A stretch of 64,000 nt of DNA from Schmidtea nova (Eukaryota), in contig CM097883.1 of assembly GCA_044892505.1 (NCBI GenBank), positions 266,104,001 through 266,168,000 of the forward strand, written 5' to 3'. Positions 6,248 to 55,440 of the stretch are shown one piece after another. Positions within the stretch are counted from its first letter, which is position 1; every line of letters starts with the position of its first letter. The position numbers and the translations under genes are program-made. The notes beneath the pieces are model-generated. The model saw only the letters and a list, made by a program, of their open reading frames with translations, had not been told where the DNA came from and made no database searches.

Positions 6248-6251
6248 AAAA

Positions 6252-20326: not shown

Positions 20327-20591
20327 AACTTCTTTCTCACGCACATATGTACTAAACTGTACTATTGTACTAGAAAGTTGTAAATCGCAAACATCCAGCC
20401 AACAATTACGGTAGATGTTGTATTATATTCACCATGGCAGGTTCCAATTGTCCTTTCCTCGGTTATAGTCAGTAACCTAAGAAAATACTATGATAAATCA
20501 TAGTTTACTACAACTCCGGATATCTCATGACACCACTTTGTAAGTTATAGTTATTTAAGTTAGACAATTGGAGATCCTAGCAAATTAGACT

Positions 20592-26200: not shown

Positions 26201-26250
26201 GTGTCGGCGGCTTCCTCTCCCTTCGTTTTTAATTTATCATTTGTTTTCAT
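23224..26250 (-). CDS. R2-type protein, 1008 aa (C2H2 ZF, Myb, RT, CCHC, REL endonuclease)
   Basis: CDFC..H...H; WTVEEE..RSKESIR (Myb); QRDPLSP and AYADD; CKAGC..SLSHISQKC; RHNKV; KPDLVI..VVDV. Confidence 0.95.
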   Translation of the reverse strand: MKTNDKLKTKGEEAADTFACDFCEAVFSTKIGKGVHTSNKHRDEHDAAKINKINKNKINSRNAIWTVEEEVRMAKVHVACERLECNRGVLMYKLGTVSADRSKESIRAHLKTVRYCKILQVLRENPDDNIYIPQNKQQVQFAHDESDKEAIIKYLSALPKKEGIDDWQERDLDYIIHGPSASDEKRRCLEIYCNDITFSHRPKGKPPRSKVSPLVKPPKDAKKHLKKEFRRKTYGALQELFKKDRSEAAKVILGGKVDSLVSGIEPVTGLGEYWRGVFERESDADTRAVETVTEESNMVLPITDSEVLNSVKEIDLKTACGPDGITTATLRTIPTSVLVKLFNLVIFLGYLPPVLKSSRTTLIPKTDNPKSPSDYRPISINSVITRVLNKILAQRTLNYDKSFSAQKGFKPIDGCLENTILLDSILSDARKNKKNIALAFIDMKKAFDSVNHDSILRAAKIAHYPKLLLNYIENSYTDAETIVDGTPATFKRGVKQRDPLSPALFNNIIELAIEKAYKTQLGYKMNGNTYPIMAYADDIILLAETKEGLQDILSSVLRELGENGLSVNAAKCASIVAKRDGKNDSWIITPERVADGEEEFPILLSNDFYKYLGIYFGPLGKMKNNLTKIFTERINNITISPIKPQQKLEVLTNFLIPGILHEAILGETDDLELCELDKITRKLVRKWLHLPKDTCFSYIHSKVKDGGMGVPTLLAEVKFAKITRLRRLADSSDGRIRGLVEQDVVRNLLAKWSKPIKTGDSLAYEKHTYYESMRDLLYKKLDGKGLCESDKVPFVHNWLKARTKLMTGRSFVNSVKVRGNLFSTPTRLSRMNGGSATSSSICKAGCGLPCSLSHISQKCTATHGMRVERHNKVMLFTADIARKKGWKTLVEPVIPYKETIRKPDLVIIKDRRAMVVDVQIVSEKSDLRERNTTKSKVYDEIEIRDWVLGQGADTVEFGALTLNWRGIWAEDSWDTVQKFGVTQSDAMLISLKVLNWTARMYCAWKNWH

Positions 26251-29040: not shown

Positions 29041-29110
29041 CGAGTTTACGTTTTTGGTTCCATATTTCCATATGGTTAACAGGAAGACCCCGTGAAGGCC
29101 CGTAAACTCG
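29041..29110 (-). ncRNA. HDV-like ribozyme core, R2 copy 2
   Basis: P2 CGAGTTTACG/CGTAAACTCG, L3 TTCACG, P4 CCATAT-GGAA-ATATGG. Confidence 0.7.
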
Positions 29111-29375
29111 AGCTTCTTTCTCACGCACATATGTACTAAACTGTACTATTGTACTAGAAAGTTGTAAATCGCAAACACCCAGCCAACAATTACGGCAGAT
29201 GTTATATTATATTCACCATGGCAGGTTCCAATTGTCCTTTCCTCGGTTATAGTCAGTAACCTAAGAAAATACTATGATAAATCATAGTTTACTACAACTC
29301 CGGGTATCTCACGACACCACTTTGTTAGTTATAGTTATTTAAGTTAGACAATCGGAGATCCTAGCAAACTAGACT

Positions 29376-29624
29376 TAGTCCGTGCCAGTTCTAAGTTGAC
29401 CGTTTAGTGTACAACGACGATCGTCAATCCGAAGACCAACAACCAAAGCAAAATTCGCCCATCAACCAGTTAAAAAAGTACCATCTCAACACCATTTCAA
29501 GTTGCCTCAAAACAGCATCAAAACAGCTCAATTCTATACCAACTGACTTCTTAACTAAGCCCATCATACCCGGTCCTTAGAGCCAATCCTTTTACCGAAG
29601 GTACGGATCTAATTTGCCGACTTC
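29376..29624 (-). rRNA. 28S: 28S rRNA gene fragment at the 5' end of R2 copy 2
   Basis: Same sequence and ends as 20592-20840. Confidence 0.9.
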
Positions 29625-30502
29625 TTTTTTTCTTACCATCGCGTCTGTGTGCGCATTATGATTTTCATGGTTATCGCGTCTGTGTGCGCGTTTTGTTGGG
29701 ACTTTTATTTGAGGTTTGGAATAAATTGATTGAGAAATAAAATCGTGGAGTTTAAAAATCTGGTTGTTTTATCGTGTGATTTGTTGGATAAAATTGAATT
29801 TCTGGGAGTTTTGAAATCTTTGCTGAGTAATTCTTTGTGATTGATTCGAATTTTCTGAAATGACATCAAGCTTGATCTTATTACATTTTAATCATGTTGG
29901 CAACGTTCTCATACAAGTAGACTCTAATTCGATAGTTGACATTCAAACTGAAGACGATGCTTTGGAAACGAAAGAGTGTATCTCTATAGATTGTGAAAAT
30001 AATATTATATCCTCAAGAGATATCAATCCTACTTTTCAATTTAAGAAAGTTAATTGTGAGTAGGTAGTTAGTGGCTCCCCAACCCAGTGGCTCCCCAACC
30101 CACCCCCCCCCCTAGAAAAAAAGTGGGTTGGGGAGCCACTATGTTTTTTCGTCGATCTTTTGTATAGGAAAATTTTCGTCGATCTTTTGTATAGGAAAAT
30201 TTTCGTCGATCTTTTGTATAGGAAAATTTTGTCGGTCTTTTGTACAGGTGGGTTGGGGAGCCACTATGTTTTTGGGTCGATCTTTTGTATAGGAAATTTT
30301 TATCAATCTTTTGAATAGGATTTTCTACTCGGAGATTTTTTTCTCGGGCAAAAAGGGACTCTGAAATTTTGTACAGTGATTTTTGATCTGGTATTTTTGA
30401 ATAGGATTTTTGTTATGGTTATTTTGAATAGAGAATTTTATGTCGGTCTTTTGTATAGAAAAATTTTTTTCAATCTTTTCTATAGGATTTTTTTTTGTCA
30501 GT

Positions 30503-33500
30503 CGAGGCATATGGCTAGAGAAACTCATAGATAAAGTATAAAACGAGCTATTAACCTGGAGTTTTATTTTCCTTTTTAAGCACAGGCTCTTTGTAAGGTC
30601 AGTTTGTTTTGGAACCAACCTACGCAGATGCTTCACTCGTTTTTCCCACCAAGGATTAGCAGGAGTAATAAACTCTTTATCGGAGTCTTTCCCCAAAAGC
30701 CAACATACGTTTTACCGCTTTATTAGCAATTGGTTTGCCTGCACACTTTACTCAGAGTGTACATAGGTAGCAATCCCTAGAGATTACTCAGTGCCTCATC
30801 ACCTTTGGACCATCTATCACCTTTACTTACACTTGGTAAACTTCCTCTCTTTGTACTCGTGTTAGTTTATTAGTGTCGAAGTGATAGATTAATGCCAGTC
30901 GAATCATAGTGGCAAGCCACAAAATCAACGACCAACATTCAACTTACATGATAGATCAACGGATTCTTTAGAGGACAAAAGATACTTGTGGTATCCGGCT
31001 CCCCCTGCGCTGCCCCCACCACAGGTACGTTATTAAGGCAATCGTATTACCGGCCGCGTTGACGCATGTAAACCCACTTAGCAAGCCAAGTGGTGCAGTT
31101 TATCTTTTTATAACTGGTGGTCCTACTCCCACACTGTCTTTACAACTTAACACCAACCAGCTCCGAATATCTTGCTTTCGCTGTCATTTAAACGGTGAGA
31201 CTGGCACTAAGCTGCGCTGCCAATGGTTATGATAAGTAGTCATAACTCGTGTAGTCCTATTCAGCAATCTGAATAGCGTAGTTTGTCTTTTTGTAGCTGG
31301 TGGTTCTACTCCCACACTGCCGGACAAGCATCGTACTCATCCTCATACAAACACTAATACTCTATTAAACTCGAGGCTTTGATAATGTCTTGCCTGACTC
31401 TTCAAGAGATTTATATACATGTTTGCGTCCAGTTTTCCCGGTTCATTATTATTATTAAGATAAAATAAAATAAAATAAAGTTAAAAGGATACGATTGTTC
31501 TTGTAGAGAAGATCGAATAGGCCTAAAGAAAACTCAAAGTAATTGAACTTACCACAGGGTCTCCTCGAATGCACGACTTGGACCTAACTAGCGGGATTTA
31601 TACTAAGGGAGTTCCACCCATTCTTGCACCCTCAGCCGATCGTGCACCCACCCTTTAAGCGAAAGGAAGACCCTCTACGGACTGTCGGGAGAGTTCTTCG
31701 CAGCTTCTTCTGTTATCCCTACAATGGGTCTCGGAAGCGGCCCCAAATCCACGAGTGAAACCTACGAAGCAATCTTTCCTTCTAAATATTTTGTAAATAA
31801 GTAATTTAATTAAATCTGCCCCCTATTTTATAGTCAAGCAAACATACAGACAAACAACCAGACAACCAGAGACTAAATGAAAATAAGTAAACAATAAATA
31901 AAATAAGAAACGAAATGTGAGTTTAGTATATAGAATATATGGTTATTTTAATAATAAAGATAATGTTATAAACCAATACTGTTATTATATAAACATACAA
32001 ACTATAAGTGCCAATTCTTCCAAGCGCAATACATTCTCGCCGTCCAATTTAGTACTTTCAGAGATATGAGCATGGCGTCTGACTGCGTGACACCGAATTT
32101 CTGTACGGTGTCCCATGAATCCTCGGCCCAGATACCCCGCCAGTTCAGCGTTAACGCACCGAACTCTACTGTATCTGCCCCCTGTCCAAGGACCCAGTCA
32201 CGTATCTCAATCTCATCATATACTTTGGACTTTGTAGTATTCCGTTCTCTCAGATCTGACTTTTCACTAACAATTTGTACATCCACGACCATAGCACGGC
32301 GGTCCTTGATAATTACTAAATCCGGTTTCCGTATAGTCTCTTTATACGGTATAACCGGTTCCACAAGGGTCTTCCTCCCCTTCTTCCTCGCGATGTCAGC
32401 TGTAAAAAGCATCACTTTATTGTGTCGTTCCACTCGCATTCCATGCGTAGCAGTGCACTTTTGTGATATGTGGCTAAGACTGCAGGGTAACCCACAACCC
32501 GCCTTACATATAGATGATGAAGTGGCGGAGCCGCCATTCATACGACTGAGTCGCGTCGGGGTACTAAAAAGGTTTCCACGAACTTTGACACTGTTGACGA
32601 AGGATCTACCTGTCATCAACTTAGTCCGGGCCTTAAGCCAGTTATGAACAAAAGGCACCTTGTCGCTTTCACACAGACCCTTCCCATCTAGCTTTTTATA
32701 CAACAAGTCTCGCATCGACTCGTAATAGGTATGTTTTTCGTACGCCAGGGAGTCACCAGTTTTAATAGGCTTACTCCATTTGGCTAACAAGTTTCTGACG
32801 ACATCCTGCTCCACTAATCCGCGAATCCTTCCATCACTGCTATCGGCAAGCCTCCTCAATCTAGTTATCTTCGCAAACTTCACCTCAGCCAAGAGAGTAG
32901 GTACCCCCATTCCTCCATCTTTAACTTTGGAGTGAATGTACGAAAAGCACGTATCTTTGGGTAGATGTAGCCATTTGCGAACAAGCTTCCGGGTTATCTT
33001 GTCCAGTTCACAAAGCTCCAAGTCATCGGTTTCGCCTAAAATTGCTTCGTGCAAAATGCCCGGTATAAGGAAGTTAGTTAAGACTTCCAGTTTTTGTTGT
33101 GGTTTAATAGGGGAGATAGTAATATTATTAATGCGTTCTGTAAATATTTTAGTTAAGTTATTTTTCATTTTACCCAGCGGACCAAAATAAATGCCTAGAT
33201 ATTTATAAAAATCATTTGATAACAAAATGGGAAATTCCTCTTCACCATCGGCCACTCGCTCCGGCGTTATTATCCAACTGTCATTCTTCCCGTCTCTTTT
33301 GGCTACAATGGATGCACACTTTGCAGCATTCACTGAAAGACCATTTTCACCAAGTTCTCGAAGAACAGAAGAAAGAATGTCTTGGAGTCCTTCTTTGGTC
33401 TCAGCTAGAAGGATAATATCATCAGCGTAGGCCATAATGGGATAGGTATTTCCATTCATCTTGTATCCGAGTTGGGTTTTGTAGGCTTTCTCAATCGCCA

Positions 33501-36500
33501 ACTCAATAATGTTATTAAAAAGTGCGGGTGAAAGCGGGTCCCTTTGCTTTACACCTCTTTTGAACGTAGCTGGCGTTCCATCTACAATAGTCTCGGCGTC
33601 AGTGTAGCTATTTTCTATATAGTTTAAAAGTAGTTTGGGGTAATGGGCTATTTTTGCCGCTCTCAAAATACTGTCATGATTGACAGAATCAAAAGCTTTC
33701 TTCATGTCAATGAAGGCGAGGGCAATATTCTTTTTATTTTTACGTGCATCTGAGAGGATGGAGTCTAGTAAAATGGTATTCTCTAGACATCCATCAATGG
33801 GCTTGAACCCTTTTTGGGCTGAAAAACTTTTATCATAGTTTAGGGTTCGCTGAGCGAGAATTTTATTTAAAACTCTAGTTATAACTGAATTTATTGAAAT
33901 AGGCCGATAATCACTTGGACTTTTTGGATTATCGGTCTTTGGTATTAGCGTTGTTCTGGAGCTTTTTAGAACCGGAGGAAGATAACCTAGAAAAATAACC
34001 AAATTAAATAACTTTACCAATACAGACGTTGGGATCGTCCTTAGTGTTGCTGTAGTAATGCCATCAGGACCACAGGCAGTCTTCAGGTCTATTTCCTTAA
34101 CTGAATTCAGAACCTCTGAATCGGTTATAGGTAAAACCATATTACTCTCCTCAGTTACAGTCTCTACCGCTCTTGTATCAGCATCTGATTCCCTTTCGAA
34201 AACCCCACGCCAATACTCACCCAGACCCGTGACTGGTTCGATACCACTCACCAAAGAATCGACCTTCCCCCCGAGTATCACTTTGGCTGCCTCACTTCTG
34301 TCTTTTTTGAATAATTCTTGGAGAGCTCCATATGTTTTTCTTCGGAACTCTTTCTTCAGATGCTTCTTCGCATCCTTGGGCGGCTTGACTAGTGGGCTAA
34401 CCTTACTACGGGGTGGCTTTCCTTTGGGACGATGGCTAAAGGTTATATCATTACAATATATCTCTAGACATCTTCTTTTTTCATCAGACGCAGAAGGACC
34501 GTGGATAATATAGTCAAGGTCGCGCTCTTGCCAATCATCGATACCTTCCTTCTTTGGTAGTGCGGAGAGGTATTTAATGATTGCTTCTTTGTCCGATTCA
34601 TCGTGGGCGAACTGAACCTGCTGCTTGTTTTGCGGTATGTAAATATTGTCGTCAGGGTTTTCCCTTAACACTTGTAATATTTTACAATACCTAACCGTTT
34701 TCAAGTGTGCTCTAATGGACTCCTTGGAGCGATCAGCACTAACGGTCCCTAATTTGTACATTAAAACTCCTCTATTACATTCGAGTCTCTCACATGCCAC
34801 ATGCACCTTAGCCATGCGGACTTCCTCCTCAACAGTCCAAATTGCGTTACGCGAGTTGATTTTATTTTTATTTATTTTATTTATCTTAGCGGCATCGTGT
34901 TCATCACGATGTTTGTTACTGGTGTGTACCCCCTTCCCAATTTTAGTCGAAAAAACTGCTTCACAAAAATCACAAGCGAAAGTGTCGGCGGCTTCCTCTC
35001 CCTTCGTTTTTAATTTATCATTTGTTTTCATTTTTCATTTTTCAGTTTTTAAGGGAGTGTTTTACAGTAAGACACACTCCCTTGGTAATGTCTCACCGTC
35101 CTAAAATTAACCTACGTAGATACCTTACCTAGTTCTTTAGTGGTGGTGGTCGTATACAATCTTATTCTTAAGCATTATTATTTTCCTAGCATGAAAGCCC
35201 ACATACAACCAGTAGTTTGTTGTATGTGGGCTTTCATGTTAGCATGCTCCCTGATACCGGAGCATTACTTTAAAAGACAATATAACTACAATATAACTAC
35301 ATATTTAAAAGTCTGTGCAAAATGCCCACATAGTACCCCTTGGGGCACTATGTGGGCAATTATACATTACAACTTTTGTACACAAATGAAAATACATTAT
35401 ACACAATATGACATCAGTACTATTAACTACATATTTAAAAGTCTGTGCAAAATGCCCACATAGTACCCCTTGGGGCACTATGTGGGCAATTATACATTAC
35501 AACTTTTATACACAAAATCAGAATTTACAAATACAGATTGGTGGGGAGGACATACTGGGCCAGTCCTCTCCTTATATAATACCATAGTTAATACTTAAAT
35601 ACCTGAGTACTAATTTATTTCAAGTACCTAAAATACCTGGAAGCCTTAAAATACCTGAAATACCTAAAATACCTACAATACCTAAAATACCTACAATACC
35701 TACAATACCTACAATACCTAAAATACCTACAATACCTAAAATACCTACAATACCTACAATACCTAAAATACCTACAATACCTAAAATAACTAAAATACCT
35801 AAAGATACCTAAAATAACTAAAATACCTAAAATACCTGAAAATAGAATGACAATATGGTTAATAATTAATATATTTAATAATTTAAGGGTCAAGGAAAAT
35901 TTTGGCGTGGCGGTGCTTGGGTTAAGGGGGAGATCTCGATCTAGTTAATACTTATGAACTAGTCAATTCTCGTACCAACATGTTTTCGGTTGAGTAGTGG
36001 CCTACTACTCCACCGAAAACTGTCAGTCTGATCTCCCTTATCCGCCCTTACCCTAGCGGCTGGTTTGAACTTATGTAGCAGTACTACACAGACCCATTCA
36101 CGTTTATAGTGAGAAGGGTATCACTCTGATCTGCCGGACGTACCCTACCCTCGCCTGATCATAACGTTGATAGGTCCGTTATGATTTTTCCTGTGGTAGG
36201 ATCTGCTCTATAGAGACTATATACTATAGAGGGTCTATCCCGCCTTGTTATTGGCAAGATAAAACTATGTAAAAATGCAAACACTAACTATGCGTAAGCA
36301 ATATATTACCTTTTTTAAGGACAGGTATAAAGTTGACCACTACCCCAAGAACGCGACTGCTTTAGACGCTTTGTTCAAGGCGAACACATGGTACTCGATA
36401 GCCCTTAATGAGAGTAATGCGGCACCGAATTGTCGAAGCACCGAAGCACTCCAATTCTTCTACCGCAGACCTAAGATCAATTGGCAATCAGTGGTATTTT

Positions 36501-36504
36501 TCAC
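30503..36504 (-). mobile_element. R2-clade element, copy 3 (5'-truncated in UTR, ORF complete)
   Basis: Near-identical to copy 2; stops at 36504 against a T16 tract. Confidence 0.92.
32002..35031 (-). CDS. R2-type protein, 1009 aa
   Basis: Same domains as copy 2; W-to-R in KKGWK and stop shifted by one codon. Confidence 0.95.
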   Translation of the reverse strand: MKTNDKLKTKGEEAADTFACDFCEAVFSTKIGKGVHTSNKHRDEHDAAKINKINKNKINSRNAIWTVEEEVRMAKVHVACERLECNRGVLMYKLGTVSADRSKESIRAHLKTVRYCKILQVLRENPDDNIYIPQNKQQVQFAHDESDKEAIIKYLSALPKKEGIDDWQERDLDYIIHGPSASDEKRRCLEIYCNDITFSHRPKGKPPRSKVSPLVKPPKDAKKHLKKEFRRKTYGALQELFKKDRSEAAKVILGGKVDSLVSGIEPVTGLGEYWRGVFERESDADTRAVETVTEESNMVLPITDSEVLNSVKEIDLKTACGPDGITTATLRTIPTSVLVKLFNLVIFLGYLPPVLKSSRTTLIPKTDNPKSPSDYRPISINSVITRVLNKILAQRTLNYDKSFSAQKGFKPIDGCLENTILLDSILSDARKNKKNIALAFIDMKKAFDSVNHDSILRAAKIAHYPKLLLNYIENSYTDAETIVDGTPATFKRGVKQRDPLSPALFNNIIELAIEKAYKTQLGYKMNGNTYPIMAYADDIILLAETKEGLQDILSSVLRELGENGLSVNAAKCASIVAKRDGKNDSWIITPERVADGEEEFPILLSNDFYKYLGIYFGPLGKMKNNLTKIFTERINNITISPIKPQQKLEVLTNFLIPGILHEAILGETDDLELCELDKITRKLVRKWLHLPKDTCFSYIHSKVKDGGMGVPTLLAEVKFAKITRLRRLADSSDGRIRGLVEQDVVRNLLAKWSKPIKTGDSLAYEKHTYYESMRDLLYKKLDGKGLCESDKVPFVHNWLKARTKLMTGRSFVNSVKVRGNLFSTPTRLSRMNGGSATSSSICKAGCGLPCSLSHISQKCTATHGMRVERHNKVMLFTADIARKKGRKTLVEPVIPYKETIRKPDLVIIKDRRAMVVDVQIVSEKSDLRERNTTKSKVYDEIEIRDWVLGQGADTVEFGALTLNWRGIWAEDSWDTVQKFGVTQSDAMLISLKVLNWTARMYCAWKNWHL

Positions 36505-37858
36505 TTTTTTTTTTTTTTTTATTTTTCATTTTCATGGTTATCGCGTCTGTGTGCGCGTTTTGTTGGGACTTTTATTTGAGGTTTGGAATAAATTGATTGA
36601 GAAATAAAATCGTGGAGTTTAAAAATCTGGTTGTTTTATCGTGTGATTTGTTGGATAAAATTGAATTTCTGGGAGTTTTGAAATCTTTGCTGAGTAATTC
36701 TTTGTGATTGATTCGAATTTTCTGAAATGACATCAAGCTTGATCTTATTACATTTTAATCATGTTGGCAACGTTCTCATACAAGTAGACTCTAATTCGAT
36801 AGTTGACATTCAAACTGAAGACGATGCTTTGGAAACGAAAGAGTGTATCTCTATAGATTGTGAAAATAATATTATATCCTCAAGAGATATCAATCCTACT
36901 TTTCAATTTAAGAAAGTTAATTGTGAGTAGGTAGTTAGTGGCTCCCCAACCCAGTGGCTCCCCAACCCACCCCCCCCTAGAAAAAAAGTGGGTTGGGGAG
37001 CCACTATGTTTTTTCGTCGATCTTTTGTATAGGAAAATTTTCGTCGATCTTTTGTATAGGAAAATTTTGTCGGTCTTTTGTACAGGTGGGTTGGGGAGCC
37101 ACTATGTTTTTGGGTCGATCTTTTGTATAGGAAATTTTTATCAATCTTTTGAATAGGATTTTCTACTCGGAGATTTTTTTCTCGGGCAAAAAGGGACTCT
37201 GAAATTTTGTACAGTGATTTTTGATCTGGTATTTTTGAATAGGATTTTTGTTATGGTTATTTTGAATAGAGAATTTTATGTCGGTCTTTTGTATAGAAAA
37301 ATTTTTTTCAATCTTTTCTATAGGATTTTTTTTTGTCAGTCGAGGCATATGGCTAGAGCTAGAGAAACTCATGTGATAAAGTAAAACGGGCTATTAACCT
37401 GGAGTTTTATTTTCCTGATTAAAGCACAGGCTCCGTTTCAGATCGTCCTTATAGGTACGAAGTTGAATTGGATGCTTCACCCGCTTTTCCCACCCAGGAT
37501 TGGCAGGGATCCTCCCTTATCAGAGTTTAACCCAAATGTACACCCGGTTTTTCTCCGTACTATGTACACTCAGTTCAGCCTTGCACACTTTTACTCATAG
37601 TGATACACATAAAAGGGCAGCCCCGAAGGACCACCAGGTGTCTCACATCCGAAAAGTTGGAAGAAGCCAACCCACCCCCTGCGGTACCATCTAGGAGCCT
37701 AGGAATGGTTACGACCTCTCCCCGTGCATGGATACTATCAACAAGACTGTCGATATCCATCTCGGTGAGCACGTTGACCCACCTGAAATGCATTAATTCA
37801 AATTGTCCAATCTTGTAATGTTTCCATTTAGACCTTTCAACCTAAACTAATACACCAC

Positions 37859-37926
37859 CGCATACGTCTTCTGTCCCATTTACATTATGGTTACCAGGAA
37901 GCACCCCGTGGAGGCCCGTAATTGCG
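37859..37926 (-). ncRNA. HDV-like ribozyme core of the SIDE-like element
   Basis: Sense CGCAATTACG-G-GCC-TCCACGG-GGT-GCTTCCT-GG-TAA-CCAT..ATGG-GACAGAAGA-CGTATGCG. Confidence 0.7.
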
Positions 37927-38340
37927 ATTTCTCTTCGTGCACTAACAGTACTATACCGTACTTAAATGTGCCAAGAGCGGTATCACTGCAAATACCCGGC
38001 CAACATGACGTCGGCAGATGTCGGATACATTAGTAGACACATTTTGGCAAAAATCTGATTGCTGTTCTCAAGCTAATTCCCGTAGCCAAAGAACATACTA
38101 TAATATCCGGAGTCCCATGAGAAGATAGCCTCCGAGGAGACGCATAAGACATTAAAAGGGATATTATAGCTCTAACCACTCAGGCTCACAAGGTCCTTTG
38201 CAGTTTTACTATACAATCAAATTAACTAATCCGAACCACTTCTAGATTGACGCCTAGGGTCCTTACAGATCCGTTAAACCTGTAGATTCACATCGCCGCG
38301 TCTCTAGAGCCAATAATTTTATTTGAGGTCCAGATCGAAT

Positions 38341-38589
38341 TAGTCCGTGCCAGTTCTAAGTTGACCGTTTAGTGTACAACGACGATCATCAATCCGAAGA
38401 CCAACAACCAAAGCAAAATTCGCCCATCAACCAGTTAAAAAAGTACCATCTCAACACCATTTCAAGTTGCCTCAAAACAGCATCAAAACAGCTCAATTCT
38501 ATACCAACTGACTTCTTAACTAAGCCCATCATACCCGGTCCTTAGAGCCAATCCTTTTACCGAAGGTACGGATCTAATTTGCCGACTTC
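38341..38589 (-). rRNA. 28S: 28S rRNA gene fragment at the 5' end of the SIDE-like element
   Basis: Same fragment and same inner junction GGCACGGACTA. Confidence 0.9.
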
Positions 38590-46863: not shown

Positions 46864-47108
46864 TCGGCAAATTAGATCCGTACCTTCGGTAAAAGGATTG
46901 GCTCTAAGGACCGGGTATGATGGGCTTAGTTAAGAAGTCAGTTGGTATAGAATTGAGCTGTTTTGATGCTGTTTTGAGGCAACTTGAAATGGTGTTGAGA
47001 TGGTACTTTTTTAACTGGTTGATGGGCGAATTTTGCTTTGGTTGTTAGTCTTCGGATTGATGATCGTCGTTGTACACTAAACGGTCAACTTAGAACTGGC
47101 ACGGACTA
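46864..47108 (+). rRNA. 28S: 28S rRNA gene fragment at the 5' end of the right-arm R2
   Basis: TCGGCAAATTAGATCCGTACCTTCGG...GGATTGGCTCTAAGG...CAACTTAGAACTGGCACGGACTA. Confidence 0.9.
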
Positions 47109-47373
47109 AGTCTAGTTTGCTAGGATCTCCGATTGTCTAACTTAAATAACTATAACTAACAAAGTGGTGTCGTGAGATACCCGGAGTTGTAGTAAACTAT
47201 GATTTATCATAGTATTTTCTTAGGTTACTGACTATAACCGAGGAAAGGACAATTGGAACCTGCCATGGTGAATATAATATAACATCTGCCGTAATTGTTG
47301 GCTGGGTGTTTCCGATTTACAACTTTCTAGTACAATAGTACAATTTAGTACATATGTGCGTGAGAAAGAAGTT

Positions 47374-47443
47374 CGAGTTTACGGGCCTTCACGGGGTCTT
47401 CCTGTTAACCATATGGAAATATGGAACCAAAAACGTAAACTCG
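47374..47443 (+). ncRNA. HDV-like ribozyme core, right-arm R2
   Basis: P2 CGAGTTTACG/CGTAAACTCG, P3 GCC/GGT, L3 TTCACGG, P1-3' TCTTCCT, P4 CCATAT/ATATGG, J4/2 AACCAAAAA. Confidence 0.7.
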
Positions 47444-47901
47444 GTAATAGTCATTTGATCTCATTATCCTTCCTTCGGGAGGTGATTTTAATTATCGTTA
47501 CGTTCTATAGTAGCGTTTTGAGAGGTTCACTTTTGGTAATATATATATGTCCAGAAGTGCCTCTTTAAGGTGATAGTATATGAAAATATACCTTTATGGC
47601 AACATGAAGTTTAAGATCCGATCTTCTAGTGAGAATCTCTGTGGGACGCCCGGAGTAACCGAACTAGGAAGACTGTACTGAGATTATACTAAGAATTACT
47701 CTCACTCTTTTGTTAAAAACAGTGTTAATTCTTATAATGGATCTTAAATCTACCAGCGAATATATACATTAGTACTTATTCTGCGAGTGTAGTGCGGGGA
47801 CGCCTTTGAAACTAGAGGAACTGATTGAACGATCTGGTCGATGTTGGATAAAATATAGTGATGGTAATAATCGTGTTTGGTTCGAGGTTGGTTATATCAG
47901 T

Positions 47902-49347
47902 GGTAGCAAATCTCACTATAAATTGACTTTGTTCTATATAGCCTAGCTATATAGTAAAAATACGGGACGTTTAGTAGTTGGTGGGTGAAACATACTGCTG
48001 ATTACTGATAAGGGCCCGGGTAAGCAGGTCTTGTCGTCGACACGAGATTGTCGGTCCTGTGTACAGGTGTTTTGCAATTCTCACTGCCAAAGGAATTGTT
48101 CTAAGTGGCCTAGTTGCTTAGTAAACTCGATGTTGGCTCGATGTTGGTTATATAAGTGGTGGCAATTCTCACTATAAAACTGATATTGTTCTATATAGCT
48201 TAGCTATATAGTCAAATTCTAAGTGTTTGCCAGTTGGTGGGTGAAAAATACCACTGATTGCCAATTGATCTTAGGTCTGCGGTAGAAGAATTGGAGTGCT
48301 TCGGTGCTTCGACAATTCGGTGCCGCATTACTCTCATTAAGGGCTATCGAGTACCATGTGTTCGCCTTGAACAACTACGTCTAACGCAGGCGGGTTCTTG
48401 GGGTAGTGGTCAACTTTATACCTGTCCTTAAAAAAGGTAATATATAGCTTACGCATAGTTAGTGTTTGCATTCTTACATAGTTTTATCTTGCCAATAACA
48501 AGGCGGGATAGACCCTCTATAGTATATAGTCTCTATAGAGCAGATCCTACCACAGGAAAAATCATAATGGACCCATCAACGTTATGATCAGGCGAGGGTA
48601 GGGTACGTCCGGCAGATCAGAGTGGTGGCAATTCCCACTATAAAAATGATTTTGTTCTATATAGCCTAGCTATATAGTAAAAATACGGGACGTTTAGTAG
48701 TTGGTGGGTGAAACATACTGCTGATTACTGATAAGGGCCCGGGTAAGCAGGTCTTGTCGTCGACACGAGATTGTCGGTCCTGTGTACAGGTGTTTTGCAA
48801 TTCTCACTGCCAAAGGAATTGTTCTAAGTGGCCTAGTTGCTTAGTAAACTCGATGTTGGCTCGATGTTGGTTATATAAGTGGTGGCAATTCTCACTATAA
48901 AACTGATATTGTTCTATATAGCTTAGCTATATAGTCAAATTCTAAGTGTTTGCCAGTTGGTGGGTGAAAAATACCACTGATTGCCAATTGATCTTAGGTC
49001 TGCGGTAGAAGAATTGGAGTGCTTCGGTGCTTCGACAATTCGGTGCCGCATTACTCTCATTAAGGGCTATCGAGTACCATGTGTTCGCCTTGAACAACTA
49101 CGTCTAACGCAGGCGGGTTCTTGGGGTAGTGGTCAACTTTATACCTGTCCTTAAAAAAGGTAATATATAGCTTACGCATAGTTAGTGTTTGCATTCTTAC
49201 ATAGTTTTATCTTGCCAATAACAAGGCGGGATAGACCCTCTATAGTATATAGTCTCTATAGAGCAGATCCTACCACAGGAAAAATCATAACGGACCCATC
49301 AACGTTATGATCAGGCGAGGGTAGGGTACGTCCGGCAGATCAGAGTG
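47902..49347. repeat. ~723-bp tandem duplication in the right-arm R2 5' region
   Basis: GGCAGATCAGAGTG ends at 48624 and at 49347, with matching interiors. Confidence 0.9.
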
Positions 49348-50460
49348 ATACCCTTCTCACTATAAACGTGAATGGGTCTGTGTAGTACTGCTACATAAGT
49401 TCAAACCAGCCGCTAGGGTAAGGGCGGATAAGGGAGATCAGACTGACAGTTTTCGGTGGAGTAGTAGGCCACTACTCAACCGAAAACATGTTGGTACGAG
49501 AATTGACTAGTTTATAAGTATTAACTAGATCGAGATCTCCCCCTTAACCCAAGCACCGCCACGCCAAAATTTTCCTTGACTATTAATTCTTTTGATTTTA
49601 TTAATTTTATTAATTATTAATCATACTATCATTTTATTTTCAGATCCTAACTTAACTACATCTATATTATATTACACTTTATTTTATATCTCATTCTAGA
49701 TTCCCCATCATCTGGATTATTTATTCTAGGTTCATCACCACTTTTCTAGGTAATTATGTATTGGAGATATAAAGGAAAATAGGCATCTAATTATTATCAA
49801 TTTAGTATTATATAAGGAGAGGACTGGCCCAGTATGTCCTCCCCCCCATGGTTATTTATAAATTTAATTTTTGTATAAAGGTTATAGTGTATAATTGCCC
49901 ACATAGTGCCCTAAGGGGCACTATGTGGGCATTTTGCACAGACTTTTAATATGTATACTATATATAATGTATTCTTATCTATATATAAAGGTTGTAATGT
50001 ATAATTGCCCACATAGTGCCCCAAGGGGCACTATGTGGGCATTTTGCACAGACTTTTAATATGTATACTATATATAATGTATTCTTATCTATATATAGAG
50101 GTTGTAATGTATAATTGCACACATAGTGCCCTAAGGGGCACTATGTGGGCATTTTGCACAGACTTTTAATTATTATCATTATTATTATTATTATTATCAT
50201 TATTATTGGTACGATTATTAATGTTTAATTCTTTTTGATGTTCTGCTAGCACGAAAGCCCACATACAGCAAACTACTGGTTGTATGTGGGCTTTCATGCT
50301 AGGAAAATAATTATAATACTTAGGAATAAGACTGTACACGACCACCACCACTAAAGAACTAGGTAAGGTATCTATGTAGGTTAATTTTAGGACGGTGAGA
50401 CATTACCAAGGGAGGGTGTCTCATTGTAAAACACTCCCTTAAAAAACCAAACCATGAAAG

Positions 50461-53400
50461 ATGAAGCCTACAAAACAAACAATTACGAAGGGAGAGGAAG
50501 CCGCCGCCACTTTCGCTTGTGATTTTTGTGAAGCGATTTTTCCAACTAAAATTGGGAAGGGGGTACACACCAGTAACAAACATCGTGATAAACACGATGC
50601 CGCTAAGATAAATAAAATAAATAAAATCAACTCGCGTAACGCAATTTGGACTGTTGAGGAGGAAGTCCGCATGGCGAAGGTGCATGTGGCATGTGAGAGA
50701 CTCGAATGTAATAGGGGAGTTTTAATGTACAAATTAGGGACCGTTAGTGCTGATCGCTCCAAGGAGTCCATTAGAGCACACTTGAAAACGGTTAGGTATA
50801 GTAAGATATTACAGGTGTTGAGGGAAAACCCTGATGATAATATTTTCATACCACAAAACAAGCAGCAGGTTCAGTTCGCCCACGATGAATCGGACAAAGA
50901 AGCAATCATTAAATACCTCTCCGCACTACCAAAGAAGGAGGGTATTGATGATTGGCAAGAGCGCGACCTGGACTATATTATCCACGGTCCTTCTGCGTCT
51001 GATGAAAAAAGAAGATGTCTAGAGATATATTGTAATGATATAACCTTTAGCCATCGTCCCAAAGGAAAGCCACCCCGTAGTAAGGTTAGCCCACTAGTCA
51101 AGCCGTCCAAGGATGCGAAGAAGCATCTGAAGAAAGAGTTCCGAAGACAAACGTATGGAGCTCTCCAAGAATTATTCAAGAAAGACAGAAGTGCGGCAGC
51201 CAAAGTGATACTCGGGGGGAAGGTCGATTCTTTGGTGAGTGGTATCGAATCCGTTACGGGTCTAGGTGAGTATTGGCGCGGGGTTTTCGAAAGGGAATCG
51301 GAGGCTGATACAAGAGCTGTAGAGACTGTAACTGAGGAGAGTAATATGGTCTTACCTATAACCGGTTCAGAGGTTATGAATTCGGTTAAGGAAATAGACC
51401 TGAAGACTGCCTGTGGTCCTGATGGCGTTACTACTGCAACACTAAGGACGATCCCGACGTCTGTATTGGTAAAGTTATTTAATTTGGTTATTTATCTAGG
51501 TTATCTTCCTCCGGTTCTTAAAAGCTCCAGAACAACGCTAATTCCAAAAACCGATAATCCAAAAAGTCCAAGCGATTATCGGCCTATTTCTATAAATTCT
51601 GTGATAACTCGAGTTTTGAATAAAATTCTCGCTCAGCGAACCCTAAATTACGATAAAAGTTTTTCAGCCCAAAAAGGGTTTAAACCAATAGATGGATGTC
51701 TAGAGAACACTATTTTACTAGACTCCATCCTCTCTGACGCACGTAAAAATAAAAAGAATATTGCCCTCGCCTTCATTGACATGAAGAAAGCTTTTGATTC
51801 TGTCAATCACGACAGTATTCTGCGAGCGGCAAAAATAGCCCATTACCCCAAACTACTCTTAAATTATATAGAAAATAGCTACACTGACGCCGAGACTATT
51901 GTAGATGGAACGCCAGCTACGTTCAAAAGAGGTGTAAAGCAAGGGGGCCCGCTTTCACCCGCACTTTTTAATAATATTATTGAGTTGGCGATTGAGAAAG
52001 CCTACAAAACCCAACTCGGATACAAGATGAATGGAAATACCTATCCCATTATGGCCTACGCTGATGATATTATCCTTCTAGCTGAGACCAGAGATGGACT
52101 CCAAGACATTCTTTCTTCTGTTCTTCGAGAACTTGGTGAAAATGGTCTTGCAGTGAATGCTGCAAAGTGTGCGTCCATTGTAGCCAAAAGAGACGGGAAG
52201 AATGACAGTTGGATAATAACTCCGGAGCGAGTGGCCGATGGTGAAGAGGAATTTCCCATTTTGTTATCAAATGATTTTTATAAATATCTAGGCATTTATT
52301 TTGGTCCGCTGGGTAAAATGAAAAATAATCTAACTAAAATATATACAGAACGCATTAATAATATTACTATTTCCCCTATTAAACCACAACAAAAACTGGA
52401 AGTCTTAATTAACTTCCTTATACCGGGCATTTTGCACGAAGCAATTTTAGGCGAAACTGATGACTTGGAGCTTTGTGAACTGGATAAGATGACCCGGATG
52501 CTAGTTCGCAAATGGCTACATCTACCCAAAGATACGTGCTCTTCGTACATTCACTCCAAAGTTAATGATGGAGGAATGGGGGTACCTACTCTCTTGGCTG
52601 AGGTGAAGTTTGCGAAGATAACCAGATTGAAGAGGCTTGCCGATAGCAGTGACGGAAGGATTCGCGGATTAGTGGAGCAGGATGTTGTCAGAAACTTGTT
52701 AGCCAAATGGAGTAAGCCTATTAAAACTGGTGACTCCCTGGCGTACGAAAAACATACCTATTACGAGTCGATGCGAGACTTGCTGTATACAAAGCTAGAT
52801 GGGAAGGGTCTGTGTGAAAGCGACGAGGTGCCTTTTGTTCATAACTGGCTTAAGGCCCGGACTAAGTTGATGACAGGTAGATCCTTCGTTAACAGTGTCA
52901 AAGTTCGTGGAAACCTTTTTAGTACCCCGACGCGACTCAGTCGTATGAATGGCGGCTCCGCCACTTCATCATCTATATGTAAGGCGGGCTGTGGGGATCC
53001 CTGCAGTCTTAGCCACATATCACAAAAGTGCACTGCTACGCATGGGATGCGAGTAGAAAGACACAATAAAGTGATGCTTTTTACAGCTGATATCGCGAGG
53101 AAGAAGGGTTGGAAGACCCTTGTGGAGCCGGTTATACCGTATAAAGAGACTATACGAAAACCGGATTTAGTAATCATCAAGGACCGCCGTGCTATGGTCG
53201 TGGATGTACAAATTGTTAGTGACAAGTCAGATCTGAGAGAACGGAATGCTACAAAGTCCAAGGTATACGATGAGATAGAGATACGTGACTGGGTCCTTGA
53301 GCAGGGGGCAGATACGGTACAGTTTGGTGCGTTAACATTGAACTGGCGGGGTATCTGGGCTAAGGATTCATGGGACACCGTACAGAAATTCGGTGTCACA

Positions 53401-53481
53401 CAGTCAGATGCAATGCTCATATCTTTGAAGGTACTAAACTGGACGGCGAGAATGTATTGCGCTTGGAGGACTTGGCACTAG
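50461..53481 (+). CDS. R2-type protein, 1006 aa
   Basis: Same domain order as the other copies; QGGPLSP in place of QGDPLSP; different N-terminus. Confidence 0.95.
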   Translation: MKPTKQTITKGEEAAATFACDFCEAIFPTKIGKGVHTSNKHRDKHDAAKINKINKINSRNAIWTVEEEVRMAKVHVACERLECNRGVLMYKLGTVSADRSKESIRAHLKTVRYSKILQVLRENPDDNIFIPQNKQQVQFAHDESDKEAIIKYLSALPKKEGIDDWQERDLDYIIHGPSASDEKRRCLEIYCNDITFSHRPKGKPPRSKVSPLVKPSKDAKKHLKKEFRRQTYGALQELFKKDRSAAAKVILGGKVDSLVSGIESVTGLGEYWRGVFERESEADTRAVETVTEESNMVLPITGSEVMNSVKEIDLKTACGPDGVTTATLRTIPTSVLVKLFNLVIYLGYLPPVLKSSRTTLIPKTDNPKSPSDYRPISINSVITRVLNKILAQRTLNYDKSFSAQKGFKPIDGCLENTILLDSILSDARKNKKNIALAFIDMKKAFDSVNHDSILRAAKIAHYPKLLLNYIENSYTDAETIVDGTPATFKRGVKQGGPLSPALFNNIIELAIEKAYKTQLGYKMNGNTYPIMAYADDIILLAETRDGLQDILSSVLRELGENGLAVNAAKCASIVAKRDGKNDSWIITPERVADGEEEFPILLSNDFYKYLGIYFGPLGKMKNNLTKIYTERINNITISPIKPQQKLEVLINFLIPGILHEAILGETDDLELCELDKMTRMLVRKWLHLPKDTCSSYIHSKVNDGGMGVPTLLAEVKFAKITRLKRLADSSDGRIRGLVEQDVVRNLLAKWSKPIKTGDSLAYEKHTYYESMRDLLYTKLDGKGLCESDEVPFVHNWLKARTKLMTGRSFVNSVKVRGNLFSTPTRLSRMNGGSATSSSICKAGCGDPCSLSHISQKCTATHGMRVERHNKVMLFTADIARKKGWKTLVEPVIPYKETIRKPDLVIIKDRRAMVVDVQIVSDKSDLRERNATKSKVYDEIEIRDWVLEQGADTVQFGALTLNWRGIWAKDSWDTVQKFGVTQSDAMLISLKVLNWTARMYCAWRTWH

Positions 53482-54994
53482 CAGTTTGTATGTTTATATA
53501 ATAAAAGTATTCTTTTTAATATTATCTTTATTATTAAAATAAACATATACTTTATATACTAACGTTACGTTTAATTTTCTTATTGTTCTCATTGTTAATA
53601 TGCTTATATATATTTTTAGTCTCAGGTTGCATGATTGTTTGTCTGTATGTTTGCCTGTTTTATAAAATAAGGGGCAGATCTAATTAAAATAATCGTTAAA
53701 CTAAAAACATTTAGAAGGAAAAATTGCTTTGTAGGTTTCGCTCGTGGATTTGGGGGCTGCTTCCGAGACCCATTGTAGGGATAACAGAAGAAGCTGCGAA
53801 GAACTCTCCCGACAGTCCGTAGAGGATCTTCTTTAGCTCAGAGGGTGGGTGTACGATGAACTGAGGGTGCAAGAGTGGGTGAAATTCCCTTATAAATCCC
53901 GCTATTAGGTTCAAGTCCTACATTCGAGAAGATCCTGTGGTAAGATCATTACTTTGAGTTTTCTTTAGGCATATTCGATCTTCCCTACAAAAACAACCGT
54001 ATCCTCTTAAAGTTTATTCTATTTTATTTTATTTTATTTTATATATATAATAAACCGGGAAAACTGGACGCAAACATGTATATAAATCTCTTGAAGAATC
54101 AGGCAAGACATTATCAAAGCCTCGAATCTAATAGAGTATTAGTGTTTGTATGAGGATGAGTACGATGCTTGTCCGGCAGCGTGGGAGTAGAACCACCAGC
54201 TACAAAAAGACAAACTACGCTATTTAGATTGCTGAATAGGACTACACGAGTTATGACTACTTATCATAACCAATGGCAGCGCAGCTTAGTGCCAGTCTCA
54301 CCGTTTAAATGACAGCGAAAGCAAGATATTCGGAGCTGGTTGGTGTTAAGTTGTAAAGACAGTGTGGGAGTAGGACCACCAGTTATAAAAAGATAAACTG
54401 CACCACTCGGCTTGCTAAGTGGGTTTACATGCGTCAACGCGGCCGGTAATACGATTGCCTTAATAACGTACCTGTGGTGGGGGCAGCGCAGGGGGGAGCC
54501 GGATACCACAAGTATCTTTTGTCCTCTAAAGAATCCGTTGATCTATCATGTAAGTTGAATGTTGGTCGTTGATTTTGTGGCTTGCCACTATGATTCGACT
54601 GGCATTAATCTATCACTTCGACACTAATAAACTAACTCGAGTACAAAGAGAGGAAGTTTACCAAGTGTAAGTAAAGGTGATAGATGGTCCAAAGGTGATG
54701 AGGCACTGAGTAATCTCTAGGGATTGCTACCTATGCACACTTTGAGTAAAGTGTGCAGGCAAACCAATTGCTAATAAAGCGGTAAAACGTATGTTGGCTT
54801 TTGGGGAAAGACTCCGATAAAGAGTTTATTACTCCTGCTAATCCTTGGTGGGAAAAACGAGTGAAGCATCTGCGTAGGTTGGTTCCAAAACAAACTGACC
54901 TTACAAAGAGCCTGTGCTTAAAAAGGAAAATAAAACTCCAGGTTAATAGCTCGTTTTATACTTTATCTGTGAGTTTCTCTAGCCATATGCCTCG

Positions 54995-55440
54995 ACTGAC
55001 AAAAAAAAATCCTATAGAAAAGATTGAAAAAAATTTTTCTATACAAAAGACCGACATAAAATTCTCTATTCAAAATAACCATAACAAAAATCCTATTCAA
55101 AAATACCAGATCAAAAATCACTGTACAAAATTTCAGAGTCCCTTTTTGCCCGAGAAAGAAATCTCCGAGTAGAAAATCCTATTCAAAAGATTGATAAAAA
55201 TTTCCTATACAAAAGATCGACCCAAAAACATAGTGGCTCCCCAACCCACCTGTACAAAAGACCGACAAAATTTTCCTATACAAAAGATCGACGAAAATTT
55301 TCCTATACAAAAGATCGACGAAAATTTTCCTATACAAAAGATCGACGAAAAAACATAGTGGCTCCCCAACCCACTTTTTTTTCTAGGGGGGGGGGGTGGG
55401 TTGGGGAGCCACTGGGTTGGGGAGCCACTAACTACCTACT
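54995..55440 (-). repeat. Right TIR
   Basis: Reverse complement of 12651-13093; ends CCTACT followed by the TSD ATTGTG. Confidence 0.93.

What the first reader, a model, noticed from the sequence alone, without database searches (positions are those of the whole stretch)
46864..47443. HDV-like ribozyme whose P1 partner seems to lie ~400 nt upstream of the R2 site, at the element's 5' end
P2, P3, L3, P4 and a catalytic-C candidate are conserved with compensatory changes between the full element and the SIDE. The P1 3' strand ((G/T)CTTCCT) has no good nearby partner but pairs with conserved 28S GGGAAGU, starting with the typical G-U wobble. The elements begin at GAAGTCGG or TCGG, within 2-6 nt of the predicted cut. 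That implies a ~500-nt J1/2 containing rRNA sequence, much further upstream than the tens of nucleotides known for R2 ribozymes, and would explain the 28S cargo.
Basis: partly seen in the sequence, partly recalled or inferred. Interest (0 to 1): 0.85.

Follow-up and report, generated by a model that had tools for sequence, protein, structure and literature searches.

The report
R2 ribozyme behind a 28S leader
A flatworm R2 retrotransposon and a short non-coding derivative each carry about 250 bases of 28S rRNA ahead of an HDV-like ribozyme core, and the core's cut-site strand matches the 28S bases just where the copies begin, which suggests but does not prove self-cleavage unusually far upstream in the rRNA.

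Summary
The observation mostly holds. The stretch 46864-47443 is the 5' leader of an R2-clade element (46864-55440). It has three more copies and one short ORF-less derivative (SIDE) on the minus strand.

- **Leader:** the first 249 nt are 28S-derived (Rfam LSU model about 1914-2130).
- **Ribozyme core:** an HDV-like core lies at 47375-47442. Its layout (P2, P3, 7-nt L3, P1', P1.1, P4, C-bearing J4/2) matches that of compact ribozymes in two R2 relatives. Its active site is 89% conserved between the full element and the SIDE, while the flanks are 32-48% identical.
- **P1:** no leader holds a complete in-register partner for P1'. The Rfam 28S consensus GGGAAGU (model 1908-1914) pairs with it perfectly, 2-6 nt upstream of the copy starts.
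- **New here:** a decayed older 28S copy inside the SIDE also starts at about model 1915. Three 5' ends therefore cluster within 7 nt.

Caveats:
- No copy lies in rDNA.
- The two G's that open P1 are absent from every copy.
- The 28S piece stops well short of the R2 site.
- J1/2 loops of 216 to over 700 nt are already published, so only the distance of the cut within 28S would be new.

Verdict: partly supported; a new variant of a known kind; moderate interest.

The parts
46864..55440 (+). Full-length R2-clade element, + copy
   Evidence: It is 93-94% identical to the minus-strand copies. The 5' end is TCGG, and the 3' end (...CTACCTAC) is shared with all copies.
46864..47112 (+). 28S-derived leader (LSU model about 1914-2130, including an expansion-segment hairpin)
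   Evidence: Rfam LSU_rRNA_eukarya scores 80.9 bits, E 3e-19. The same piece in copy A scores 93.1 bits from model 1906. It is 99.2% identical to the SIDE leader.
47113..47374 (+). Rest of the proposed J1/2, containing a conserved hairpin block at 47281-47313
   Evidence: Identity between full element and SIDE is 36-48% here, except 74% in the block. The block folds as a hairpin in the leader's minimum-energy structure.
47375..47442 (+). HDV-like ribozyme core. P2 is 47375-83 with 47434-42. P3 is 47385-87 with 47395-97. L3 is 47388-94. P1' is 47398-403. The P1.1 strand is 47404-05. P4 is 47409-14 with 47419-24, closed by a GGAA loop. J4/2 is 47425-33, with C47427/47428 as the catalytic candidate.
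   Evidence: Coordinates were checked by script. P2, the P3 hairpin and P4 appear in the fold of the core alone (z = -3.0) and in the fold of the whole 597-nt leader (z = -5.0). The layout is the same as in the R2 relatives L002 and L001.
50461..53481 (+). R2 ORF, 1006 aa, intact
   Evidence: The best PDB hit is Bombyx R2 (8gh6, E 3e-118, residues 223-988), followed by other R2 proteins. Pfam finds RVT_1. There are no internal stops.
36926..38589 (-). SIDE-like non-autonomous element (about 1.66 kb, no ORF over 72 aa)
   Evidence: Its last approximately 600 nt are 88% identical to the full element's 3' end. Its 28S leader is 99% identical to that of the full element.
38337..38589 (-). SIDE: GAAG plus the fresh 28S leader
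38052..38345 (-). SIDE: older, decayed second copy of the 28S piece. It starts at about model 1915/1916 and is joined to ACGGAC of the fresh copy at a CGG microhomology.
   Evidence: The best ungapped 40-mer matches 29 of 40, and none of 200 shuffles reach that. The gapped alignment spans nearly the whole piece; 6 of 500 shuffles reach its score.
37859..37926 (-). SIDE ribozyme core. P2 is 4+4 bp around a 2-nt bulge. P3 is GCC with GGU. L3 is UCCACGG. P1' is GCUUCCU. The P1.1 strand GG pairs with CC of L3. P4 is 4 bp. J4/2 is GACAGAAGA.
21275..29624 (-). Copy B, full length, ORF intact (23224-26250). Its core is at 29042-29109.
12651..20840 (-). Copy A, full length. Its core at 20258-20325 carries two substitutions at the P2/P3 junction.
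14599..17625 (-). Copy A ORF, broken by one premature stop; no frameshifts
   Evidence: counts only.
30059..36504 (-). Copy C, 5'-truncated (no leader and no ribozyme), ORF intact (32002-35031)
20843..21274 (-). Non-R2 spacer between copies B and A. The same sequence occurs at 12219-12650 and 29627-30058, and in shortened form at 36528-36925 and 38592-38719. Two extra A's separate it from GAAG.
   Evidence: All spacers are 100% identical. The native continuation is seen at 12219 downward.

Best explanation
The stretch is the 5' leader of an R2-clade (R2D-like) retrotransposon in a flatworm genome. A short non-autonomous derivative shares its design.

An HDV-like ribozyme core sits about 510 nt (full element) or 660 nt (SIDE) from the 5' end. 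Its P1' strand (CUUCCU or GCUUCCU) pairs with the 28S heptamer GGGAAGU (LSU model 1908-1914), so self-cleavage just 5' of that heptamer sets the RNA 5' end. The 28S sequence between the cut and the element's junction therefore travels with the RNA and is copied into every new insertion, including insertions outside rDNA such as those in this window.

The event happened at least twice: an older leader that began at the same 28S position has decayed inside the SIDE behind the fresh one.

Shown:
- R2 identity.
- The 28S origin and the bounds of the leader.
- The core's layout and conservation.
- Complementarity to the consensus heptamer.
- Clustering of the 5' ends.

Inferred:
- That the core cleaves.
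- That source copies sit in 28S genes, or at least keep the full heptamer.
- That the 150 missing model positions before the R2 site are a junction deletion carried along in the RNA.
For: - **R2 protein:**
- **Leader is 28S:**
- **Core layout:**. The same order (P3' GGU, a 7-nt P1', then GG) occurs in the relative L002, whose P1 GGUCGGC is the first base of the element. It also occurs in L001, whose P1' complements the 28S string GACUCUC at -13 (28S strings in PMC3774820; target AAGG|TAGC in PMC7650587, and PMC5035012 S1).
- **Active-site motif:** the SIDE's CCUCCACGGGG matches 9 of 11 positions of the R2Dm/R2Tg motif CCUCCUCGUGG quoted in PMC5035012.
- **Conservation between full element and SIDE:** active site 89%, flanks 32-48%.
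- **P1:** no leader holds a complete in-register partner, whereas the consensus has one at model 1908. Chance is about 0.01-0.02.
- **5' ends:** they fall at model 1910 (array type), 1914 (+ copy) and about 1915 (old SIDE copy).
- **Fresh leader:** it is 99% identical between lineages whose adjacent sequence is unalignable, as expected if it is re-sampled from host 28S.
- **Published model:** duplications of upstream 28S, and propagation of junction deletions through the RNA, are described in PMC3774820.
Against: - No copy here is in a 28S gene, and none has the two G's that open P1. As they stand they offer at best AAGAAGU, with an A-C mismatch at +2.
- In the full-length lineage P1 is only 6 bp and P1.1 has a U-U mismatch.
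- J4/2 is 9 nt, and the catalytic C is only a candidate.
- The 28S piece ends at about model 2130, not at the R2 site.
- The A, B and SIDE 5' junctions share the same spacer, so they may not be independent events.
- Rfam's HDV-like models give no hit. That is expected without a local P1, but it is no support.
- Only two diverged lineages are available, so covariation is limited to outer P2.
Confidence: 0.5

Rival explanations
1. The ribozyme and the P1 position are the same, but the family is independent of rDNA, like the published non-target-specific flatworm R2NS families. The 28S leader is then an inherited relic, not re-sampled. P1 is the element's own first seven bases (AAGAAGU in the array-type copies), and it trims read-through transcripts at the element's 5' end, as in the relative L002.
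For: - All five copies here are outside rDNA, in at least two flank contexts, and one is 5'-truncated.
- Non-target-specific R2 of the R2D clade is known in the planarian Schmidtea (PMC5035012), and the host here is a flatworm.
- Exactly two extra A's precede GAAG at the array junctions, filling the P1 register.
- L002 shows a non-rDNA R2 relative that starts at its P1.
Against: - AAGAAGU has an A-C mismatch at +2, and the + copy lacks the strand altogether.
- An inherited leader should have diverged like its surroundings, yet it is 99% identical between lineages and keeps the universally conserved 28S positions, while the older copy behind it has decayed.
- A fresh 28S piece placed upstream of an old one needs contact with real 28S.
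Confidence: 0.2
2. The core is an active ribozyme but uses a different P1, so the match to the leader's edge is a coincidence. Candidates are a local 5-bp partner (AGGAA at 47241 in the full element, GGGAA in the SIDE), the internal AAGAAGU at 46932, or GGGAG about 25 nt upstream of the canonical R2 site.
For: - Five-base-pair in-register partners exist in both lineages 150-175 nt upstream of the core.
- GGGAG in the published upstream 28S strings gives 5 pairs, two of them wobbles.
- Duplex energies do not separate the candidates.
- A 4-bp P1 is known in one wasp R2.
Against: - A 5-mer of that kind is expected about once per leader by chance.
- The SIDE candidate lies inside the decayed 28S copy and is not homologous to the full element's candidate.
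- The canonical -28 to -22 strand GGCGGGA does not pair.
- None of these explains why three 5' ends cluster at model 1910-1916.
Confidence: 0.15
3. The core is a relic that no longer cleaves. The 28S leader came from a template switch or from recombination with 28S RNA or DNA, and its 5' bound reflects something other than a ribozyme, such as an RNA end or an obstacle to reverse transcription.
For: - P1 is incomplete in all copies.
- The full lineage has a P1.1 mismatch, and copy A has two core substitutions.
- The join between the fresh and old 28S copies uses a CGG microhomology, typical of end-joining or template switching.
- R2 reverse transcriptase is known to jump between templates (my own knowledge).
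Against: - The active site is 89% conserved between lineages with unalignable flanks, which argues for selection.
- The protostome hidden break lies in the D7a loop (PMC6925239). By my own knowledge of LSU numbering that is several hundred nt upstream of model 1908.
- No other known RNA end lies there.
- The same 5' bound was reached on separate occasions.
Confidence: 0.15

Closest known systems
R2 HDV-like ribozymes that cleave upstream in 28S (Eickbush, Burke and Eickbush 2013, PMC3774820)
   Same: The ribozyme is a double-pseudoknot core in the R2 5' UTR whose P1 5' strand is supplied by 28S sequence. J1/2 is long (216-498 nt in silkmoths, over 700 nt in honeybee). P1' is conserved because 28S is constrained, and the 28S bases are retained on the RNA and copied into new 5' junctions.
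   Different: Published cuts lie 9-36 nt upstream of the R2 site. Here the predicted cut is about 220 nt upstream of the element's own 28S junction, and by my reckoning roughly 370 model positions from the canonical site. J1/2 is largely 28S sequence. Cleavage has not been tested.
5' extension of R2 by duplicated upstream 28S (Figure 8 model in PMC3774820; 113-nt duplication in horseshoe crab)
   Same: A fresh 28S copy sits upstream of an older, decaying 28S copy inside the element, and the cut stays at the upstream P1.
   Different: The duplicated piece is about 220-250 nt rather than 13-113 nt, and it is seen in copies outside rDNA.
Non-target-specific flatworm R2 (R2NS-1_SMed and R2NS-1_CSi, Kojima et al. 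2016, PMC5035012)
   Same: An R2-clade element in a flatworm with insertions outside 28S genes, and a protein closest to the single-zinc-finger Bombyx type.
   Different: No sequence of those families was on hand, so identity is untested. That paper mentions no 28S-derived 5' leader. The elements here are 8.2-8.6 kb, against about 5.9 kb for the longest listed copy.
SIDEs, short internally deleted R2 elements (Eickbush and Eickbush 2012, PMC3414825)
   Same: It is short and has no ORF. It keeps the 5' ribozyme region and a 3' end like that of the autonomous element (88% identity).
   Different: Its 5' part is not a simple deletion product of the full element in this window. It comes from a much-diverged lineage, yet carries the same fresh 28S leader.
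Compact R2 ribozyme of relative L002
   Same: The order and spacing are the same: P2, P3, 7-nt L3, GGU, 7-nt P1', GG, P4, a C-bearing J4/2, then P2'. It is a non-rDNA insertion that starts at P1.
   Different: In L002, P1 lies 2 nt before P2, so J1/2 is minimal. The proteins are only about 30% identical.

Membership tests
HDV-like self-cleaving ribozyme (R2 type) | A 3-bp P3 enclosing a 7-nt L3 with the conserved U, C and G, followed directly by a 6-7-nt P1' and a 2-nt P1.1 strand | tested here: met
   The SIDE reads GCC / UCCACGG / GGU / GCUUCCU / GG, with GG pairing CC of L3. The full element reads GCC / UUCACGG / GGU / CUUCCU / GU, with one P1.1 mismatch. It matches 9 of 11 positions of the motif quoted in PMC5035012.
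HDV-like self-cleaving ribozyme (R2 type) | P2 helix of at least 5 bp closing the core | tested here: met
   P2 is 9 bp plus 2 more in the full element, and 4+4 bp plus 2 more with a 2-nt bulge in the SIDE. The outer half differs on both strands yet still pairs.
HDV-like self-cleaving ribozyme (R2 type) | P1 5' strand in the same RNA, pairing in register and usually opening with a G-U pair | tested here: not met
   No complete partner exists in any leader as it stands. The copies keep only GAAGU, or nothing of the strand. The feature is met only if the Rfam 28S consensus GGGAAGU is supplied upstream.
HDV-like self-cleaving ribozyme (R2 type) | Catalytic C in J4/2 | tested here: inconclusive
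   A C is conserved in the context (A/G)AC after P4 in both lineages, 5-6 nt before P2'. L002 has similar spacing. Its role cannot be tested here.
HDV-like self-cleaving ribozyme (R2 type) | Match to curated covariance models | tested here: not met
   Rfam gives no HDV-like hit at E up to 10. Rfam returned no R2-type family either, and the models need a local P1, so this is weak evidence.
HDV-like self-cleaving ribozyme (R2 type) | Self-cleavage | not testable with these tools
   No tool here can measure cleavage.
R2 retrotransposon | Single ORF with an N-terminal DNA-binding part, a reverse transcriptase and a C-terminal restriction-like endonuclease | tested here: met
   phmmer against PDB gives R2Bm 8gh6 at E 3e-118 over residues 223-988, plus a weak N-terminal zinc-finger stretch. 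Other R2 proteins follow. Pfam finds RVT_1.
R2 retrotransposon | Insertion at the 28S site AAGG|TAGC | tested here: not met
   The 3' flanks are non-rRNA sequence, and no rRNA is found elsewhere in the window.
SIDE (non-autonomous R2 derivative) | No ORF, but retains the 5' ribozyme region and a 3' end like the autonomous partner | tested here: met
R2NS (non-target-specific R2, PMC5035012) | Copies with unrelated, non-rDNA flanks | tested here: inconclusive
   The flanks are non-rDNA, but both flank contexts belong to one dispersed repeat. No R2NS sequence was available for comparison.

The most novel reading that the evidence does not exclude
A flatworm R2 lineage has moved its ribozyme cut site from the usual few tens of nucleotides to a 28S heptamer more than 200 nt upstream of its junction. 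Every RNA therefore carries a fresh leader of about 220 nt of 28S. Because the leader holds the P1 strand, the element is self-sufficient for 5' processing, which may be what lets it and its SIDE settle outside rDNA.
Probability: 0.3. Interest if true: 0.65.

Novelty: new variant of a known kind. Interest (0 to 1): 0.5.

Why it matters
If the reading is right, it extends about tenfold the distance over which an R2 ribozyme recruits host rRNA as its substrate strand. It would also be a concrete example of the proposed stepwise 5' extension of R2 by captured 28S sequence, with both generations still visible in one element. And it would suggest how an rDNA-specific retrotransposon can take its cleavage site with it when it leaves rDNA, an event known to have occurred in flatworms but not explained. 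If it is wrong, the region remains an ordinary R2 5' UTR with a conserved ribozyme core and a captured rRNA fragment.

Tried and rejected
- **Rfam:** at gathering and at E up to 10 it found only the LSU fragment and no ribozyme family.
- **Exact-protein look-up of the ORF:** not on record.
- **Protein homologues:** the best are only 29-33% identical. Their contigs (L001-L003) carry no rRNA detectable by Rfam, so no rDNA-resident relative gave the R2 site in model coordinates.
- **Metagenome scan for the core motif:** 9 hits, all chance matches in GC-rich bacterial contigs.
- **Duplex energies for candidate P1 strands:** all about -8 to -10 kcal/mol, so not discriminating. I used strict in-register pairing instead.
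- **Helper helix between 28S CGGCA and the conserved UGCCG at 47287:** dropped, because UGCCG is part of a local conserved hairpin.
- **Canonical -28 strand GGCGGGA as P1:** it does not pair.
- **The 28S hidden break as the source of the 5' end:** it lies in D7a, not at this position.
- **Decayed 28S after the full element's leader:** an alignment to L003's 28S-like start was marginal (19 of 500 shuffles), and an alignment to its own leader was not significant. I left this open.
- **The count of structure pairs:** not run. The MAFFT columns put the SIDE's P2 bulge out of register, and with two lineages most pairs are invariant.
- **Joined P1-plus-core construct:** not made, because segments of this region may not be strung together.

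Full report
**What is there**

The window holds one R2-clade element on the + strand (46864-55440). On the minus strand it holds a head-to-tail array: a short ORF-less element (SIDE, 38589-36926), a 5'-truncated copy C (36504-30059), and full copies B (29624-21275) and A (20840-12651). Each is followed by the same non-R2 spacer.

The 1006-aa ORF (50461-53481) matches the solved Bombyx R2 protein at E 3e-118, followed by other R2 proteins. Pfam finds the reverse transcriptase domain. The ORFs of the + copy, B and C are intact, and copy A has one premature stop.

A neighbouring proteasome alpha-6 gene is closest to flatworm proteins at 51-58% identity, so the host is probably a platyhelminth. 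The literature records both canonical and non-target-specific R2 families in the planarian Schmidtea (PMC5035012).

**The 28S leader**

The first 249 nt of every full copy and of the SIDE match the Rfam eukaryotic LSU model from position 1914 (1910 where GAAG is present) to about 2130, including an expansion-segment hairpin. The + copy begins at TCGG. Copies A and B and the SIDE begin at GAAG-TCGG, preceded by the spacer and two extra A's.

It is not present in the window. No copy lies in a 28S gene, and the 28S piece stops at ACGGAC(UAA). By my own knowledge of LSU numbering, that is roughly 150 model positions before the R2 target AAGG|TAGC (target quoted from PMC7650587, and PMC5035012 S1).

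**The ribozyme core**

| Part | Full element, + copy | SIDE |
|---|---|---|
| P2 | 47375-83 with 47434-42 (9 bp, plus 2 more) | 4+4 bp around a 2-nt bulge |
| P3 | GCC with GGU | GCC with GGU |
| L3 | UUCACGG | UCCACGG |
| P1' | CUUCCU | GCUUCCU |
| P1.1 strand | GU (one U-U mismatch) | GG, pairing CC of L3 |
| P4 | 6 bp with a GGAA loop | 4 bp |
| J4/2 | AACCAAAAA | GACAGAAGA |

The SIDE core lies at 37926-37859.

P2, the P3 hairpin and P4 appear in the fold of the core alone (z = -3.0) and persist in the fold of the whole 597-nt leader (z = -5.0).

Two R2 relatives fetched here validate the reading.
- L002 has P3' GGU, a 7-nt P1' GCCGACU and then GG. Its P1 GGUCGGC is the first base of the element, after a GATA microsatellite.
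- L001 has GGU, then GAGAGUC, then GG. That P1' complements the published 28S string GACUCUC at -13.

The SIDE motif CCUCCACGGGG matches 9 of 11 positions of the R2Dm/R2Tg motif quoted in PMC5035012.

Between the full element and the SIDE the active-site stretch is 89% identical. A hairpin block in J1/2 is 74% identical, the flanks are 32-48%, and the 28S leader is 99%. Compensation is seen only in outer P2. The rest of the evidence is conservation.

**P1**

With strict in-register pairing, no leader contains a complete partner for P1'. The best partners are 5 contiguous pairs, or have a mismatch at +2. The consensus heptamer at model 1908-1914 pairs 6 of 6 with the full element's P1' and 7 of 7 with the SIDE's, opening with a G-U pair.

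A complete partner occurs at about 0.002 (full) or 0.001 (SIDE) per position, both analytically and across the window. One within about 10 nt of the element's edge therefore has p of about 0.01-0.02.

The canonical strand GGCGGGA (-28 to -22) does not pair. GGGAG nearby gives 5 pairs, two of them wobbles.

P1' is invariant between two lineages that have otherwise diverged. That is the behaviour described for silkmoth R2, where the partner is constrained 28S.

**New evidence on the 5' end**

Directly behind the SIDE's fresh leader lies a decayed second copy of the same 28S piece. Its start aligns with GGCAAAUUAG of the leader (model about 1915/1916). It is joined to ACGGAC at a CGG microhomology: 29 of 40 ungapped matches, which none of 200 shuffles reach, and the gapped alignment spans most of the piece.

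Three 5' ends (model 1910, 1914 and about 1915) therefore fall within 7 nt, on what look like separate occasions. This fits the published model in which upstream cleavage keeps duplicated 28S on the element and junction variants are propagated through the RNA. That model would also account for a uniform deletion between model 2130 and the R2 site.

The fresh leader keeps the universally conserved 28S positions while the old one has lost many. That argues the fresh one came recently from real 28S.

**What weakens the claim**

- The copies here are all outside rDNA and lack the two opening G's.
- A, B and the SIDE share one junction type and may not be independent.
- The full lineage has a 6-bp P1 and a flawed P1.1.
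- J4/2 is long.
- Cleavage is untested.
Only the distance of the cut within 28S (known range 9-36 nt) would be new.

**Verdict**

The feature is a real R2 ribozyme core behind a captured 28S leader. The far-upstream P1 is the best available assignment (confidence about 0.5), with three rivals described in their own section. It would be a new variant of a known kind, of moderate interest.

The motifs cited come from the window, from tool output or from the papers named.

Noticed in passing
12219-38719, minus strand: The SIDE and copies C, B and A form a head-to-tail array in which the intervening spacers are 100% identical, although A and B differ by 1.8% and B and C by 0.09%. This is not a plain tandem duplication. 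It could reflect repeated insertion with a very long target duplication, or conversion.
   Followed up: partly
5611-6252 and 55441-55669: An uninterrupted version of the spacer (reverse-complemented, 96% identical) runs straight into sequence that matches the + copy's 3' flank (92%). The + copy and the array therefore sit within about 7 bp of the same site of a dispersed repeat, but in opposite orientations.
   Followed up: partly
46067-46862: A perfect palindrome (two 398-nt arms, no spacer) of AT-rich host sequence ends one base before the + copy's 5' end. It could be a fold-back at the 5' junction or an assembly artefact.
   Followed up: partly
47445-50460: The 5' UTR is about 3.6 kb long and has no sense ORF of 80 aa or more. 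It contains a 723-nt duplication (47899-49366), roughly 258-nt repeats in the array copies, and 110-nt tandem units with strong hairpins (49874-50170) that drew weak miRNA-model hits.
   Followed up: no
47281-47313, and the SIDE equivalent: A conserved hairpin block lies inside J1/2 (74% identity against 36-48% around it). It recalls the 35-nt J1/2 region that Samia cynthia R2 needs for cleavage (PMC3774820).
   Followed up: partly
20258-20325, minus strand: Copy A's core has two substitutions at the P2/P3 junction and a GGAA-to-GAAA change in the P4 loop, which is still a GNRA loop. The same copy has the broken ORF.
   Followed up: partly
L002:1-142: An R2 relative (about 30% protein identity) inserted in a (GATA)n microsatellite has a compact HDV-like ribozyme that starts at the element's first base (P1 GGUCGGC). 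This is another R2-clade element outside rDNA.
   Followed up: partly
L003:1-93: The contig of a third R2 relative begins with 28S-like sequence (AAUCCGACUGU ... GGCGGGAGUAAG) that seems to lack about 100 nt of the real rRNA and runs almost directly into the ORF start.
   Followed up: no
2645-5268: A Penelope-like reverse transcriptase with a GIY-YIG domain (ORF 3562-4752) lies in a nested palindromic arrangement interrupted by N gaps. Further reverse transcriptase and BEL/Pao-type fragments lie at 580-1278 and 8764-9774.
   Followed up: no
41900-43870: A C-rich satellite with a 21-nt sub-repeat and higher-order units of about 660 nt has a GC skew of about -0.9.
   Followed up: no
38721-38930, minus strand: An older, 80%-identical piece of the R2 3' UTR repeat region lies upstream of the SIDE's partial spacer, which suggests earlier rounds of insertion at this locus.
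   Followed up: no
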